A stretch of DNA of 63,110 nucleotides, counting the filler, from Hyphochytrium catenoides (lineage: Eukaryota; Protista; Hyphochytriomycota), in NCBI GenBank assembly GCA_900088475.1. It is 11 parts of 11 records of this genome, joined end to end, with 100 filler letters (N's around TTAATTAATTAA, not from the genome) between each part and the next. Parts side by side here need not be neighbours in the genome. Positions count along the whole stretch, not along the records: positions 28,050 to 32,319 come from FLMG01001985.1; 10 more parts are not named here. The stretch is one strand, 5' to 3'. A program made the position numbers and the translations under genes. Position 1 is the stretch's first letter; each line of letters opens with the position of its first letter. This document shows positions 9,841-34,700 of the stretch, one piece after another. Under the pieces are notes generated by a model. The model had not been told where the DNA came from and searched no databases. It saw only the letters and a list, made by a program, of their open reading frames with translations.

Positions 9841-10270
9841 AATGAAGATTTTCCTTTCCTTGGTGATCAAAAGTAAGTCCTCTGGTCAGGGACAGGAGAA
9901 CCCAGGGACGTACGGAAGGAGTAGATCAATGGAGGTAGGGGAAGAGAAGAAAGAGAAAAAGAGCTTGTGAAAGTAGAAGAGACAGTGATGATGAAGGAGA
10001 GACACGCGTGAGAGGTCTAGTAAGAGAGACAAACTCTCTTCTCTCACCAGGATGATGGAGGGGACAGAGGAAGGGAAAGTGCGAGACAGAGGAAGTGAAG
10101 AGAGACAGGGCCCAGGAGGACAAAGGGAGAGAGGCGGAGTTCAGTCCTCTACTTTTCCTCTGGAAGTGTTCTCTTCTCTCTCCTCGACATTCAAACTTGA
10201 AGTCTTCATTGAGAGCTTCGACCCAACGGGAAGGAGAAAGGTGACACAGTCTCTCTCCCTCTCTCTCTTC

Positions 10271-28049: not shown

Positions 28050-28590
28050 CATCTGATGGCAGCTGGGGCTCCAGAAGCGATCTGATGTCCAGCTACCGAG
28101 GGAGAGGGAGCAGGATAAGATTGAGAGGCCGCAGACAGAGAGAGAGAGAGAGAGAGAGAAAGAAAGAGAGAGAGAGAGAGAAAAAGAGGGTGAGAGACAG
28201 AGAGAGAGAGAGACAGAGAGAGAAGAGAGAGAGGAAAGGATAGCTGATAGTGCTCGGTAAAGAGGGCAGTTGCGGAAGACTCGTCGAAAATTCCGAGCGC
28301 GAAGGAAGCCAGGAAGGCAAGCGTAAGTCGGGCAAAGCTCCTCTCGTGAGCCCCACATCGGGAACAAGACGAGGGAGGAGAGAAGAGAGAGACAGGGAGA
28401 GAAAGAGAGAGAGAAAGAGAAAGAGAAGCTTTTCTACCCTAAGGATAGCCTCTTGCACAGTGTTCTCCTTTATGTCATCTCCATCCAGTTCCTTCAACAC
28501 TGCAGCCAAGCCACCAGGAGTCAGGCGAAGACCTAGAGATGCAGCTGCAGACCGCAGTTGGGCATGGCCTGGAATGTCCTCCGCACTCAT
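28050..28590 (-). CDS. TDRD3/RMI1-family protein, N-terminal DUF1767 region (TDRD3-like), 3' truncated
   Basis: Exons 28590-28438 and 28092-28050 splice in phase 0 to MSAEDIPGHAQLRSAAASLGLRLTPGGLAAVLKELDGDDIKENTVQEAILRLDIRSLLEPQLPSD. This aligns by eye with the recalled TDRD3 N-terminus (GWYLSDEGIEAC...ALNTDLRTIGKKFLPSD). Confidence 0.7.
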
Positions 28591-28603
28591 GATAAAGAGG
28601 AAA

Positions 28604-28658
<55 letters not shown>

Positions 28659-29069
28659 GAGAGCAAGGATAACGATAAGCAGCAGCCGTGATGAGCACGG
28701 GAGAGTGGCCGCTACGAAGAGACGTCAGCAGGCCAAGCAAACGACGAAAGCACTGTCACTCGACAAAGAGGAGTGAGGCGATCTGACCGGAGAGAGAGGA
28801 AGGCGACCACGGCTCAGAGAAGAGAGAAAAGAGAGAGAGAGAGAAATGTGTGTGTGAGAGAGAGAGAGAGAGTGCAATATCTCTTGGAGTTCAATATCTC
28901 TTTACAAAAATTGAGCACCCTTAGCGACGAAATAAGGGTTGGCGTGGACGCCAGTCTTATACCTTTCACTATACAATGTATTGCTAACCAGTCTACATAT
29001 GATAGTGTTAGCCATAACCATACCAAAATACGCCAGGGTATGGAGGAGGCTGTGGATTTGTTCAGATCA

Positions 29070-29119
<50 letters not shown>

Positions 29120-29387
29120 ATCTTTCCTCTGATCGCTCTTCAACTGCAGTCCTAATACAGAGAGCTCACTTCAAGCAGACTCTTTTTCCTCTTCTGAGCG
29201 GAGAACTTCCTTCTCGTCCTCTCCTTTTTACACCCTCGTGGCCGGCTGGTTGTCTCTTCCCTCCCCTCATCTCTCTCTCTCTCCATCCGCGCAGCAGCAA
29301 GCTTTCGCAGAGCTTCGCTTGCCGTGCTCTGAGGTCCCATCTCTCTCTCTCTTTTTCGATTGTCCTCTCTCTATTCTCTCTTGCACA

Positions 29388-30922
29388 ATGGCGCCGCGGG
29401 TGGCGCTGATGGTGGCTGAGAAGCCTTCCATCTGCAATGCAATAGCAGACGCGCTGTCAAACCGCTCGCACGAGACCAGAGGAAGATCGCCACCAGTCCA
29501 TGAGTTCTTAGGACAGTTCAGAGGAGAGGAAGTGAAGTTTAGAGTCAGTGGAGGCTGTTCTCTCCTCCTGTCTCCCCTCCGATTCTCTCTCTCTCTCTGT
29601 CGTTCTCGCTCGTTCTTCCCTCTCTCTCTCTCTCCCTCACTCCTCTATTCTTCTCTTTGTATGCTCTACCTCTCTTCCACCCGAGCCGCTTCCAACGTCT
29701 TTTCACTTCATCATCATCTCTCTCTCTCTCTCTCTCTCTGTCTCTGTCTCTCTCTCTCCCTTCATGTTTGTTTACCTAGCTCTCTGTGCCGTTGGTTCAT
29801 CACCCCGACATCCTTACTTCTTTTTAGCTCCTTCAGAGTCTTCCGTTCTCTTGATCATCAAGCTATTGTCCCTCTTCTCTTTTACTCTCTCTCCTTGCTC
29901 TTTCGTGCTCTATAGCTGTTTATCTCTCTCAAACAAGCTCTTTCTTTCTCTCACTCCCTCTCTCTTTCTCTCTCTCACTCTCTCTCTCTCTCTCATCCTC
30001 TCGTCATAGGTAACCTCTGTTGTCGGTCACATCTTCAGCACGGACTTCCCCAAGGAATATTCCAGCTGGGACGCTGTGGACCCTGCCACTCTCTTCCGAG
30101 CACCTGTGCTGAAGGTTGCCGAGAAGGGAAGCATCATAAAGTAAGTAAGGGAACAAGGTGGAAGACAAGCGGGAGGAGAAACATAAAGCACAGAGAGGAG
30201 AGAGAGAGAGAGAAAGAAAGAGAGAGAGAGAAAAAGACAGAGAGAGAGAAGCGAAGGAGAGAGAAGAGGGAGAAGCGGAGCTAGACGGTACAGAGTCAGA
30301 GAGAAGGATCTAGAAGGACCACCAGCGACGAGAGAGACAGCGAAGGAGAGGCAGCGAGAGGGAAGAGAGACACAGGGACGGGGAAGAATGTTGGCCTGGA
30401 AGAAAGGAGAAGACGCAACGGGACAGTGGGTCTTGTAAGCTTCTGGACCCTCTTCTAACGGCAGTGCGCAGTCATCTAAAAAAGGAAGCGCAGGGCGTAG
30501 ATTACCTTGTTCTATGGCTAGATTGCGACCGAGAGGTATCAATGAGAGAGAGAGATGAGAACGGCCATGTCATCACATTTTCCTTCGCTCCTCCTTTTCA
30601 TTAACAAAACCCTCTCCTTTTGTCGGTACCTGCCTACACAGTTTCTCTCTCTCTCTCTCTTCTTTCCCCAGCTCCTGGCGGTCTCTCTCTATAACTCTCT
30701 ACTTTCCCCCACTTTCTCTCTTCATATACTTTTCGCGTTGCCTAATCTCCTCCTTCCCTCTTTCTGAACAGGGAGAGAACATTTGCTTTGAAGTGATTGA
30801 TGTTGTCCGGGCCAAGCTGAACCGCCTGCCACCCGGTCGCCAGCAAATTTATAGAGCAAAGTTCTCAGCGGTCACTAGGACAGATATAGAGCAAGCACTC
30901 AGAACGCTGGGCGAACCCAACC
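29388..30922 (+). CDS. TOP3B: DNA/RNA topoisomerase III beta, TOPRIM region, 3' truncated
   Basis: Exons 29388-29543, 30010-30140, 30472-30535, 30772-30922: LMVAEKPS, VHEFLGQFRG...[66 protein letters not shown] is the beta-type signature. Confidence 0.95.
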
Positions 30923-30935
30923 NNNNNNNNNNNNN

Positions 30936-31000
<65 letters not shown>

Positions 31001-31163
31001 CACACACACTCTCTCTCTCTCATTTTCCTTCCTCTCCCCCTCACTCTCTATCTCTCCCCTTCTTCTCTCTCTCGATTCTTTCCTCTCACTTATGTGTCTC
31101 TCTGTCTCGTTCTGTTCTCTCTCTCTCTCTCTCTCTGTTTCCTCTCTTTCTCTTGTCTCGTAC

Positions 31164-31504
31164 CGTGTTAGCGACTGACTGCTGTTCATTGATTCCTTGA
31201 GTGAAGAGAACAGCAGTGATCTCTATGGGTTTTCCTTCTTTGATTGAGGAAGGCAGGAGAGAGAAGAGAGAAGGCGGAACGGAGAGAGAGCACAATACTC
31301 TCTCTCCTTCTTCTTCTCGAATTTCGGTACAGAGAGAGTGATGCAGGAACGAGGTAGCCTGGGCAAGAGAGAGAGAAATGAGAAGGGAGAGAGAGTTTAG
31401 GGACAGAGACAGAAGAACGATATGACACGCTTGAAGCGAACAGAGCGAGGAAGGAAACAGAAGAATAGCTAGACAAGACAGTATAAGAGAGAGAGAGAGA
31501 GATT

Positions 31505-31546
<42 letters not shown>

Positions 31547-31778
31547 TATCTTGAGAGGTACGTTGGAGGAAACGAAAGAAGACATCGTATCAATTCCCAA
31601 GCGCGTAACACGACGCTCTAGGTCAAAAGGGCAGCAGAAACGAGAAAAAGAGAGAGAGAGACAGACGGAGAAAAGAAAGAGAGAGAAAAGAGTTTGCGAC
31701 CTGAATAACTCTTATTCTGACTGTATTGAGCCAGTTCACTCCTTCAACCATATCTTCTAACATTGTCATCTCCTTGCC
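31164..31778 (-). CDS. INPP4: Inositol polyphosphate 4-phosphatase (INPP4) internal exons
   Basis: Exon 31778-31701 (GKEMTMLEDMVEGVNWLNTVRIRVIQ) and exon 31358-31164 (...ITAVLFTQGINEQQSVANT) match the recalled INPP4 motifs EMAMLEDM and GINEQQ. The catalytic CX5R is not in the scaffold. Confidence 0.85.
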
Positions 31779-34700
31779 CTGAGCAGAAGACGGAAGCAAA
31801 GAGGAGAGAGAGAGAGTGAGAGAAAGAGAAGAGAGAAACAGCGAAAGAGAGGAAATCATCCTCCGTAAGAAAGAGAGAAATCGAGAAATGCGACATGGGT
31901 CTCATGCAGAAAGTGAGCGTATGGAGAAGGAAAAGCATACAACAAAGACAAGCAGAAAGAATCGAAAAAGACAGGGAGAGAGAGAGAGAGAGAAAGAAAA
32001 AACAGATCTAAAGGAGAGAGAAGGAAAGAGGTTCCGCATAAAAGAGAGAACTGACAGAACAACGCCAGCGGTTTGTTCCACTAGACGCTTTTCCCCATTA
32101 AACAGCCCTCTCTTTATCCTCTCTCTCTCTCTCTCTTTCAAGCAATCTCTTCTCATTCTCTCTCTCTTCTTTCTCCGTTATATACTCTGATGCTACCATC
32201 AAAGATGGATCAGAAAGAAGAGAAAGAAAGACCGACCACCTTTCACAGTCTGATTGAGTAGCACCTTTTTCTCCTTCCCTCTCTTTCTCTCTCTGTGTTA
32301 TCCTCTCTCTCTCTCTCTCNNNNNNNNNNNNNNNNNNNNNNNNNNNNNNNNNNNNNNNNNNNNTTAATTAATTAANNNNNNNNNNNNNNNNNNNNNNNNN
32401 NNNNNNNNNNNNNNNNNNNGAGCCCTTGTCTACTGATGTTATGCTTACCGTTACAGTGTAAGGATTTTCTGCTGGTACTAGGCCCTGTAGAAGTACGCGT
32501 AGAACTACCCGTACCGGTGCCTAGGGACCATTGGCACGGTGGATGCTAAGCATCGCACCGCTCATATAAGTAGCTGCCATAAACCGCTGTCATATTCCTC
32601 CGCCATAACCCCCTGCCATAAACCACTGCTTTCAATCGCTGCCATCAACGGCTGCCTTTTTCCTCATCGCTGCTTTCTTCGTAAAGCGTGCTCGCTATCT
32701 TCGTATCCCGCTGCGTTTTCCCTATTTCACTGCCCGTTCACTAACGCGCAACCCTTTCATTAGCCCGCGGCCATAACCCGCTGCTATAATCAGCGGCCAT
32801 TCTAAACTGCTGCGGTATCCCCCTGTCATAACTCTAATGCTCCCGAAATCATATCCTTGTCCGGCTGATGATTTTGCTCCTCTCCTGAATGCTTCCTACT
32901 TTTACTCCTACTCATCAAGTCTCCTCGCTCCTACTCTGCGTTCCGTTTTACTACCCTTAATCTTGAGAGCTCCGTTCTCGCTATAAATCCTTTTGGATGC
33001 TCTTTCTCTTCCAAGCTTTTCCTCTGTATCTCTCTCTCCTGGTTAGCATTTGCTCCCCCATTGTCTTTCCTAGCCTGAGATTCTCCCTAAAATTGCCCCT
33101 ATATACCTACTTCCCCTACTCGAATATCTCTCCCCTTTCTCCAACCACTTCTCTATCCCTTCTCGCGAACTGTATCCTTTGCACAACTCTTCTTGGTGTT
33201 CCTTGCGTCCTTCGCTCTTCGTCCTTCATCAGTTGTTCTTCCTCAACTGCTTTCTCATTGTCTCTCCTAGCTTCTAAAATTCTTCCACTCTACTCTTCCG
33301 TCCGCTCTACTCCTTTGCTCCTGTCCTATATGTTACCTAGATTCCGTCTAGAGTTGATTAGCACATAGTTGTTCTCTCTGGTCACCAGTCTGACACTTAG
33401 CACTTGTTTGCCACGTTGCTTTTTCTCAACTGAAATGACATTAGCTCTTTACCAGTACGAAGTGTCGTCTGCCTAAAGTGTTATGTTCTATCTACTCAGG
33501 TAAGTGCAATCTCCTCTGTCTGCTTAGTGTGACTCTTCTCGTTGGTATCCTTGCCTAGATTGTCACAGTCCGGGTGGGGCTCTCAGTCATCCTCTTGGAA
33601 TAGTTTAGCCTAGGGCCCATTGTCGGAGAGGTGGGTAGTCCCCTATCTGAGAGATGGATGGAGTGCTCTTTAACCAAGACTGAGTATACTACCCTGGAAT
33701 TTGGTAGGCAGTGAAGTTCTGATCCTGCTTCCCAGATCAGACTTAGTCGCCTAAATAAAGTGCCACAGAAACCTCTGTTTGTGGACAATAGTTACACTAT
33801 ATGCTTCCCTCTGCTTCTTTAATATCTACACTTTGTCAGTTATTCCTACTTACCCGCTCCCGCTTCACTCGGCTTATTCTCACGAATTTCGTCCTCTGTA
33901 CCACCCCATTTCTGATGCTTCCTCTCCCTTGCTCTTCGTCTTTATCTCTCTTTCTTCCAATCGGAAACTACTCCTCTATTCTTATCTTCCTAGCCTTTGG
34001 ATGCCCATTCTGTCATTTTTGCCGTTGACTCTTTTGCTCCTCACCGACATACTTCTCACCCTTTCTTCGATATCTCACCTTTTTGTCGTTCTCTCCCATT
34101 CTCCGCGCCTGCTTCACTACTCCACTGCACGTTCTCGCGACCTCCGTCATGTGAGCCATCCATTCCGATGCTCTTTCTCTCCGTTGACATTCGTCTTTAT
34201 CTCTCTTTTTATATTGGCATCTGCTCTCCGACTCTCTTTCCTAACCTTTAAAATGCTAATTTGGCCATTTCTCGTCCGCTTGAATCCTTTGCGCCTGCCG
34301 TACATGCTTGTCAGACATATGCAAAGATTCCACCTCTCTATCCCTCACTTCTACGTCCCCGTTCCTGCTTCTCTGTACCGCTGTCCTCCAACTCTGTCCT
34401 CTGTACAAATAACTTTTGTTGTTGTTGTTGTTTTTTTTCCTTCTTCTTCCCGTCTTCGTCTATATATCTCTTCTCCCCTGTTGACAGCTCCTCTTCATTC
34501 TTCTTTCCTACTTTTTTCATACTTTACTTTACGTTCCCGTCTCGTTGACAGCTTTGCTCCGTCTTACGTGCCTTTCACTGCCTGCACTCTAATATTTCAC
34601 CTAACCCTCGATTGTTCCTCGCTCCTGCTTCTATCTTTCCTGCGGTTTGTCCCTCACTCCTACTTCTACCTTTCCTGCAGGTAATTAAAAAGGAGGCAGT

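What the first reader, a model, noticed from the sequence alone, without database searches (positions are those of the whole stretch)
28050..30922. TOP3B is head-to-head with a gene resembling its own partner TDRD3
Seen: ATGs at 28590 (-) and 29388 (+) lie ~800 bp apart in gap-free sequence. The plus gene is clearly topoisomerase III beta. The minus gene splices cleanly into a DUF1767-type N-terminus ending LRLDIRSLLEPQLPSD. Known: TDRD3 is the OB-fold cofactor of TOP3B (as RMI1 is for TOP3A), and the two genes are on different chromosomes in humans. Inference: an operon-like eukaryotic gene pair that co-regulates both subunits of the RNA-topoisomerase complex from one bidirectional promoter. 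I know of no description of this linkage.
Basis: partly seen in the sequence, partly recalled or inferred. Interest (0 to 1): 0.78.

Follow-up and report, generated by a model that had tools for sequence, protein, structure and literature searches.

The report
TOP3B beside a probable DUF1767 gene
A topoisomerase III-beta gene sits head-to-head, 797 bp away, with a small unverified gene whose first 65 residues carry the linker signature of the RMI1/TDRD3 topoisomerase-cofactor family, but the piece ends too early to say which of the two it is or whether the genes are co-regulated.

Summary
ATG 28590 (-) and ATG 29388 (+) are 797 gap-free bases apart and face away from each other. The plus gene is topoisomerase III beta: four GT-AG exons match TOP3B residues 2-170, and each exon scores better against human TOP3B than TOP3A.

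The minus gene is only a two-exon model of 51 + 14 aa, cut by the piece edge. There are no RNA runs. Exon 1 has no real homologue among 1.84 billion representative proteins, and no Pfam or PDB sequence hit.

Three things favour a DUF1767 (RMI1/TDRD3) N-terminus:
- Exon 2 matches the motif D-[LI]-R-x-[LI]-x4-L-P-[SD]-[DG], shared by human RMI1 and TDRD3, at the expected distance from the start. The chance expectation is about 6e-5 for the whole piece.
- Exon 1 folds into three helices placed as in human RMI1.
- Codon scores favour the proposed frame.

TDRD3 and RMI1 cannot be told apart here. The OB-fold loop, UBA/Tudor domains and RMI1_C all lie off the piece.

The linkage was absent from every other TOP3B locus examined, about 25 in all, none from a close relative. 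Co-regulation from a shared promoter is untested. This is a plausible, modestly interesting lead, not an established TOP3B-TDRD3 unit.

The parts
29388..29543 (+). TOP3B exon 1 (52 aa, MAPRVALMVAEKPS...KFR; Toprim AEKPS motif); donor GT at 29544
30010..30140 (+). TOP3B exon 2 (VTSVVGHIF...GSIIK plus 2 nt); acceptor AG at 30008-30009, donor GTAAGT at 30141
30472..30535 (+). TOP3B exon 3 ((N)[21 protein letters not shown]; Toprim DxD motif)
30772..30922 (+). TOP3B exon 4 (GENICFEV...LGEPN), cut by the N run 30923-30935
28591..29387 (.). 797-bp intergenic region between the two ATGs. (AG)31 at 28603-28663 and (CT)23 at 29073-29119 form a 53-nt inverted repeat. A unique core lies at about 28880-29060, with a 17-nt tandem duplication at 28870-28902. 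Purine/pyrimidine skew changes sign near 28950.
28438..28590 (-). Minus-gene exon 1 (model): 51 aa, MSAED...QEAILR, with three predicted helices (7-19, 25-35, 42-50). No sequence homologue found.
28093..28437 (-). Minus-gene intron (model): 345 nt, GTAGAA...polypyrimidine-TAG, phase 0. It stays in frame, and its only stop is the TAG at the acceptor.
28050..28092 (-). Minus-gene exon 2 (model), cut by the piece edge: LDIRSLLEPQLPSD. It carries the DUF1767-to-OB linker motif D-[LI]-R-x-[LI]-x4-L-P-[SD]-[DG].

Best explanation
This is a divergent (head-to-head) pair of protein-coding genes in a microsatellite-rich, heterozygous eukaryotic genome.

The plus gene is the 5' part of topoisomerase III beta. 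The minus gene starts 797 bp away and most likely encodes the N-terminal helical domain (DUF1767) of an RMI1/TDRD3-family OB-fold cofactor of a type IA topoisomerase. That domain is three helices followed by the conserved D-[LI]-R...L-P linker leading into the OB fold, which lies off the piece.

Shown: TOP3B identity, orientation, spacing, clean GT-AG splicing of both models, and the motif.

Inferred: that the minus gene is expressed and spliced as drawn, that it belongs to the DUF1767 family, and that the short intergenic region acts as a shared bidirectional promoter.

Whether the gene is the TDRD3-type (TOP3B partner) or the RMI1-type (TOP3A partner) cannot be decided. Adjacency to TOP3B tilts me slightly towards TDRD3-type.
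For: - TOP3B: exon-wise PDB hits favour beta over alpha, real TOP3B proteins align in order, and identity to named TOP3B proteins is 55-58%.
- The motif D[LI]R.[LI].{4}LP[SD][DG] occurs once in six frames of the piece, at 28051-28089 (-), in frame with exon 1 through a phase-0 GT-AG intron. Its chance expectation is about 6e-5 for the piece and 4e-7 for a 65-aa peptide. A looser pattern has 0 hits in 1.4 million six-frame residues of other loci.
- The motif begins at residue 53, against 44 in human TDRD3 and 60 in human RMI1. Those human sequences are from my recall; the numbering was checked against F53/P70 and V79-R96.
- The motif's Pro corresponds to human P70 and yeast P88, which is functionally important.
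- AlphaFold predicts helices at 7-19, 25-35 and 42-50 (pLDDT 75). Human RMI1 has helices at 3-19, 23-38 and 44-58.
- The model superposes on RMI1 residues 2-54 (4cgy_B) with Z 3.9, 2.5 A over 46 residues.
- Codon log-odds are highest in the proposed frame: 0.27 against at most 0.11 in the other frames, and -1.04 for the intron.
- The single heterozygous SNP in exon 1 (28552) is synonymous, at a third codon position.
Against: - Exon 1 alone has no Pfam hit at E<=10 and no TDRD3 or RMI1 hit in the PDB. It has no true homologue in 1.84 billion representatives: the three hits are repeat proteins. The word search and the ESM Atlas also found nothing.
- Foldseek gave nothing. The RMI1 structural match is tied with dozens of generic three-helix bundles.
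- The motif pattern rests on two human sequences recalled from memory.
- No RNA evidence exists.
- No OB fold is available to test.
- The linkage is absent from Nematostella, Oscarella and about 20 metagenomic TOP3B loci.
Confidence: 0.6

Rival explanations
1. The minus gene is the RMI1 orthologue, the TOP3A/RecQ cofactor that nearly all eukaryotes have. Its position next to TOP3B is then a coincidence or only a loose functional neighbourhood, not a pairing of complex subunits.
For: The motif fits RMI1 as well as TDRD3, with 6 of 13 identities to each. It includes a second Pro (window P60, human RMI1 P67) that TDRD3 lacks (my recall, numbering checked). Helix positions match RMI1, and the structural match is to 4cgy_B.
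Against: The spacing between the helix-2 region and the motif is about 8 residues shorter than in human RMI1 and closer to TDRD3 (my recall). If adjacency is not random, TOP3B's own partner is the more economical reading.
Confidence: 0.25
2. The minus-strand model is not a DUF1767 protein. It is either a lineage-specific gene of other function or a non-coding upstream region whose open frame and motif are chance products of a reader choosing frame and splice.
For: No homologue was found by any sequence search. No RNA evidence exists. The whole region stays open in frame for 215 codons because the GA/CT-rich repeats rarely create stop codons. The fold matches are generic.
Against: The chance expectation of the motif is about 6e-5 even across all six frames of the piece. 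It sits at the right distance from an ATG after three predicted helices. Codon statistics favour the frame.
Confidence: 0.25
3. The adjacency is an assembly artefact. The microsatellites in the intergenic region joined two unrelated loci.
For: Public contigs break at every (GA)n/(CT)n tract and none bridges 28377-28433, 28551-28666, 28776-28885, 29013-29157 or 29383-29774. Loose ends at 28776, 28911 and 29365 diverge from the window. The part after the N run holds no TOP3B exon.
Against: The stretch 28050-30922 is gap-free in the assembly. All its unique segments are present at similar depth in the same runs, and the divergent ends look like a second haplotype.
Confidence: 0.07

Closest known systems
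Human TOP3B (PDB 5GVC, 5GVE, 9C9W)
   Same: The N-terminal Toprim domain matches residues 3-172 in order. The AEKPS and [16 protein letters not shown] motifs are kept. Identity over exon 4 is about 50%, and beta scores better than alpha for every exon.
   Different: Only the first ~170 residues are on the piece. The catalytic Tyr, the Zn ribbons and the RGG box cannot be checked.
TDRD3 (DUF1767-OB-UBA-Tudor; TOP3B cofactor, PDB 5GVD/5GVE)
   Same: A helical N-terminus is followed by D-[LI]-R-x-[LI]-x4-L-P-S-D. The LPSD is identical to human TDRD3 as I recall it, and the distance from the start is similar (53 against 44).
   Different: No sequence-search hit. The OB fold, the short insertion loop, UBA and Tudor are not on the piece. 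In humans TDRD3 and TOP3B lie on different chromosomes (13q and 22q, from my own knowledge).
RMI1 (DUF1767-OB; TOP3A cofactor, PDB 4CGY, 3MXN)
   Same: The three-helix bundle is in the same positions. The linker motif includes both prolines. The structural superposition on 4cgy_B residues 2-54 has Z 3.9.
   Different: The Z-score is not above generic three-helix bundles. There is no Pfam RMI1_N hit for exon 1 alone. The spacer before the motif is shorter than in human RMI1.
Bidirectional (head-to-head) gene pairs that share a promoter of under 1 kb, often linking functionally related genes
   Same: Divergent orientation, 797 bp between the ATGs, and mirrored pyrimidine-rich sense strands on both sides.
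   Different: No transcription start sites or expression data exist, and the pairing is not conserved in the other TOP3B loci examined.

Membership tests
Topoisomerase III beta (type IA) | N-terminal Toprim domain with the acidic/Lys motif (AEKPS) and the DxD...E motif | tested here: met
   MVAEKPS is in exon 1, and [16 protein letters not shown] is in exons 3 and 4. Exon 3 alone gives Pfam Toprim at E 0.021.
Topoisomerase III beta (type IA) | Closer to TOP3B than to TOP3A | tested here: met
   PDB phmmer per exon gives TOP3B 26, 27.5 and 41.9 bits against TOP3A none, 18.9 and 13.3. Identity to named TOP3B proteins is 55-58%.
Topoisomerase III beta (type IA) | Topoisom_bac core with catalytic Tyr, TOP3B Zn ribbon, RGG box | not testable with these tools
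   These lie beyond the N run at 30923. No further exon is found in 30936-32319.
DUF1767 / RMI1_N family (RMI1, TDRD3) | Profile match to Pfam RMI1_N | tested here: not met
Exon 1 alone gives 0 families at E<=10. Exon 2 (14 aa) is below the tool's minimum length.
DUF1767 / RMI1_N family (RMI1, TDRD3) | N-terminal bundle of three or four helices | tested here: inconclusive
   AlphaFold predicts three helices with pLDDT 75. They lie at RMI1-like positions. The 4cgy_B match has Z 3.9 at rank 28, tied with generic bundles. Foldseek gave nothing.
DUF1767 / RMI1_N family (RMI1, TDRD3) | Linker motif D-[LI]-R-x-[LI]-x4-L-P-[SD]-[DG] with the conserved Pro (human RMI1 P70, yeast P88) | tested here: met
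   DIRSLLEPQLPSD at 28051-28089 (-) is the only hit in six frames, with a chance expectation of about 6e-5. The pattern comes from recalled human sequences, with numbering checked.
DUF1767 / RMI1_N family (RMI1, TDRD3) | OB fold with a TOP3-binding insertion loop | not testable with these tools
   It lies beyond the piece edge at 28050.
TDRD3 orthologue | Short insertion loop, Arg96/Val109/Phe139-type core surface, UBA and Tudor domains | not testable with these tools
   These features are listed in PMC5296760. All lie off the piece.
Bidirectional-promoter gene pair | Head-to-head orientation with less than 1 kb between the gene starts | tested here: met
   797 bp between the ATGs.
Bidirectional-promoter gene pair | Divergent transcription start sites and co-expression | not testable with these tools
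   No RNA run holds the stretch.
Conserved TOP3B-DUF1767 linkage | The same neighbour in other genomes | tested here: not met
   Upstream neighbours elsewhere are a histidine kinase, SPT5, an ammonium transporter, an SH3 protein, peptidase S28, a PPTase, TMEM237, a VWA protein, or ORFs with no family hit. No RMI1_N domain or motif was found in 81 of the fetched loci, about 700 kb. None of these loci is from a close relative.

The most novel reading that the evidence does not exclude
The minus gene is a true TDRD3-type partner, and the pair is a selected, co-regulated bidirectional unit in this lineage. That would show that the TOP3B-TDRD3 RNA/DNA topoisomerase complex exists outside animals and is kept in stoichiometric balance by a shared promoter.
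Probability: 0.25. Interest if true: 0.55.

Novelty: new member of a known kind. Interest (0 to 1): 0.38.

Why it matters
TDRD3 dependence of TOP3B has been established only in animals, although TOP3B itself is found across eukaryotes. Genomic coupling of TOP3B to a DUF1767-OB cofactor in a non-model eukaryote would be independent evidence that the partnership is old. It would also give a simple handle, one promoter, for studying co-regulation of the complex. I found no paper describing such a linkage. As it stands this is a lead. The cofactor's identity and the co-regulation are both unproven, and the arrangement is not general.

Tried and rejected
- Pfam on single exons gave only a weak Toprim hit for TOP3B exon 3 and nothing for minus exon 1.
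- PDB phmmer with minus exon 1 found only hexokinase at E about 1.
- The exhaustive phmmer search gave three hits, all repeat proteins (cyclase-like, He_PIG/cadherin-like, MucBP). BLASTP found no alignment to the best-scoring one (P0001), so I rejected them as spurious.
- The word search with the 215-aa read-through ORF (region 51-101) found nothing.
- The ESM Atlas gave only unnamed clusters below 0.9.
- Foldseek against the PDB gave only EF-hand-like noise at E>1.
- Rfam and tRNA scans found nothing real. All hits were microsatellite hairpins below the gathering score.
- The sigma-70 promoter scan does not apply to a eukaryote.
- tblastn of the minus exons against 80 TOP3B loci found nothing.
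- The supplement of PMC5296760 holds its alignments only as images, so it yielded no family sequences.
- I could not obtain TDRD3 or RMI1 sequences by reference and did not type them from memory into any tool. No profile-profile test was therefore possible.
- Laying reads found only short DNA contigs that break at repeats.

Full report
**What is on the piece.** The piece 28050-32319 is eukaryotic DNA of about 50% G+C. It is full of (GA)n/(CT)n microsatellites. An N run at 30923-30935 splits it.

**The plus gene.** It starts at ATG 29388 and has four exons:
- 29388-29543
- 30010-30140
- 30472-30535
- 30772-30922

All introns are GT-AG. The last exon is cut by the N run.

Searched exon by exon against PDB sequences, each exon hits human TOP3B and lies in order along residues 3-172:

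| Exon | TOP3B (bits) | TOP3A (bits) |
|---|---|---|
| 1 | 26 | none |
| 2 | 27.5 | 18.9 |
| 4 | 41.9 | 13.3 |

. Exon 3 alone gives a weak Pfam Toprim hit. The AEKPS and [16 protein letters not shown] motifs are intact. The plus gene is therefore topoisomerase III beta.

The 1.38 kb after the N run holds no further TOP3B exon in any frame. That part is either a long intron or a doubtful scaffold join.

**The minus gene model.**
- ATG at 28590 (-) opens a 51-codon exon, MSAED...QEAILR. It ends at a GTAGAA donor.
- After 345 nt, a polypyrimidine tract and an AG at 28093-28094 lead in phase 0 into LDIRSLLEPQLPSD. There the piece ends.
- The intron stays in frame. Its only stop is the TAG at the acceptor, so a mechanical ORF finder reports a 215-aa read-through ORF.
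- The two ATGs are 797 bp apart in N-free sequence.

**Is the minus model real, and what is it?** No public RNA run holds the stretch. The DNA contigs of three runs are short and break at each microsatellite. They show a second haplotype but bridge nothing.

Exon 1 alone gave nothing in every sequence search:
- no Pfam family at E<=10
- no TDRD3 or RMI1 in the PDB
- nothing by word search
- nothing in the ESM Atlas
- only three repeat-protein artefacts in an exhaustive phmmer search of 1.84 billion representatives

This is weak negative evidence. The DUF1767 region is known to be very poorly conserved, at about 18% identity between yeast and human Rmi1 (PMC4696737).

The joined 65-aa step was left out. 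Exon 2, at 14 aa, is below the tools' minimum length.

**Positive evidence for DUF1767.**

*The linker motif.* As I recall them, human RMI1 (D60-G72) and human TDRD3 (D44-D56) share the motif D-L-R-x-[LI]-x4-L-P-[SD]-[DG]. [quoted passage not shown] My recalled numbering agrees with the residues named in two papers: F53 and P70 of RMI1, and V79, A80, A81, P82, A90-M94 and R96 of TDRD3. The Pro of L-P is human P70 and yeast P88, whose mutation impairs Rmi1.
- With L relaxed to [LI], this pattern occurs exactly once in all six frames of the piece. It is DIRSLLEPQLPSD at 28051-28089 (-), which is the proposed exon 2.
- From amino-acid composition, the chance expectation is about 6e-5 for the piece and 4e-7 for one 65-aa peptide.
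- A much looser pattern has no hit in 1.4 million residues of six-frame-translated TOP3B loci.
- The motif starts at residue 53 of the model, between the TDRD3 and RMI1 positions.

*The helices.* AlphaFold (single sequence, pLDDT 75) predicts three helices at 7-19, 25-35 and 42-50. [quoted passage not shown]
- An all-against-representatives structural search places RMI1 (4cgy_B, residues 2-54) at Z 3.9, 2.5 A over 46 residues.
- That is only rank 28, tied with generic three-helix bundles.
- Foldseek found nothing.

*Coding statistics.* A codon log-odds score trained on the TOP3B exons is highest in the proposed frame: 0.27 per codon, against at most 0.11 in the other five frames. It is -1.04 for the intron. 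The training set is very small. The one heterozygous SNP in exon 1 is synonymous.

Taken together, I put about 0.7 on the minus gene being a DUF1767-family gene.

**TDRD3 or RMI1?** Nothing on the piece decides this. The discriminating features all lie beyond 28050:
- insertion-loop length
- the Arg96/Val109/Phe139 surface
- UBA and Tudor domains in TDRD3
- the long loop and C-terminal OB fold in RMI1

. The motif has 6 of 13 identities to each human protein. The second proline resembles RMI1. The LPSD and the shorter spacer resemble TDRD3 (from my recall). Adjacency to TOP3B is a mild argument for the TDRD3 type.

**Is the linkage conserved?** A metagenome scan with TOP3B exon 4 gave 80 TOP3B loci. 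None is a close relative; identity is at most 60%. The divergent upstream neighbours, checked by Pfam, were:
- a histidine kinase
- SPT5
- an ammonium transporter, in 13 related loci
- an SH3 protein
- peptidase S28
- a phosphopantetheinyl transferase
- several ORFs with no family hit

None was RMI1_N, Tudor or UBA.

A word search with a TOP3B alignment returned 4,033 TOP3B proteins. Genomic context for four of them also showed no DUF1767 neighbour:

| Source | Upstream neighbour |
|---|---|
| Nematostella | TMEM237 |
| Oscarella | a VWA protein |
| two ENA metagenome contigs with an intronless TOP3B like Nematostella's | small ORFs with no family hit |

The arrangement is therefore not general. 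Whether close relatives share it could not be tested, because none was found.

**Promoter.** The intergenic region has a unique core at about 28880-29060, which includes a 17-nt tandem duplication. It is flanked by (AG)31 next to the minus ATG and (CT)23 on the TOP3B side. These form a 53-nt, 92% complementary inverted repeat. Purine/pyrimidine skew flips near 28950, so both genes have pyrimidine-rich sense-strand leaders. This fits divergent transcription but does not prove it, because TOP3B intron 2 has the opposite skew. Co-regulation remains an inference.

**Literature.** Full-text searches found no description of a TOP3B-TDRD3 head-to-head or bidirectional arrangement. Reviews place TOP3B in plants, trypanosomes and Giardia as well as animals, but describe the TDRD3 dependence only for animals.

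**Verdict.** The plus gene is TOP3B. The neighbour is probably a DUF1767-family cofactor gene, but it is an unverified 65-aa fragment. The TDRD3 assignment and the shared-promoter co-regulation are untested. Interest is moderate to low until the scaffold is extended or RNA data exist.

Noticed in passing
window 30936-32319: The 1.38 kb after the N run holds no TOP3B exon in any of six frames, although the introns before it are only 236-466 nt. It is either a long intron or a questionable scaffold join.
   Followed up: partly
window 28093-28740 (-): The 345-nt intron of the minus model is in frame, and its only stop is the acceptor TAG. A mechanical ORF finder therefore reports a 215-aa ORF made mostly of translated microsatellite. 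This is a trap for ORF-based gene calling in this genome.
   Followed up: yes
window 28552-30833: Two haplotypes or strains appear in the public DNA runs, differing by SNPs every ~50-100 bp and by microsatellite indels. Contig ends at 28776, 28911 and 29365 diverge from the window, which suggests structural heterozygosity in the intergenic region.
   Followed up: partly
window 28870-28902: A 17-nt unit (GAGTGCAATATCTCTTG) is tandemly duplicated in the unique core of the intergenic region. It may be a promoter element.
   Followed up: no
window 28594-28646 and 29073-29125: (GA)n and (CT)n tracts form a 53-nt, 92% complementary inverted repeat that brackets the intergenic core. Such mirror purine/pyrimidine tracts can form non-B DNA.
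   Followed up: no
L009, L014, L015, L018, L026-L030, L040, L042, L046, L054, L056: In 13 related metagenomic eukaryotic contigs, TOP3B has an ammonium transporter gene (Pfam Ammonium_transp) as its divergent upstream neighbour; seen in five of these contigs plus L027, inferred for the rest from ORF clustering. This looks like conserved synteny of another kind.
   Followed up: partly
L081-L084 (gene at 10001 to ~12570): TOP3B of Nematostella, and of two ENA metagenome contigs whose TOP3B is likewise intronless, is a single intronless ORF of 855-856 aa. The window's TOP3B has three introns in its first 170 codons.
   Followed up: no
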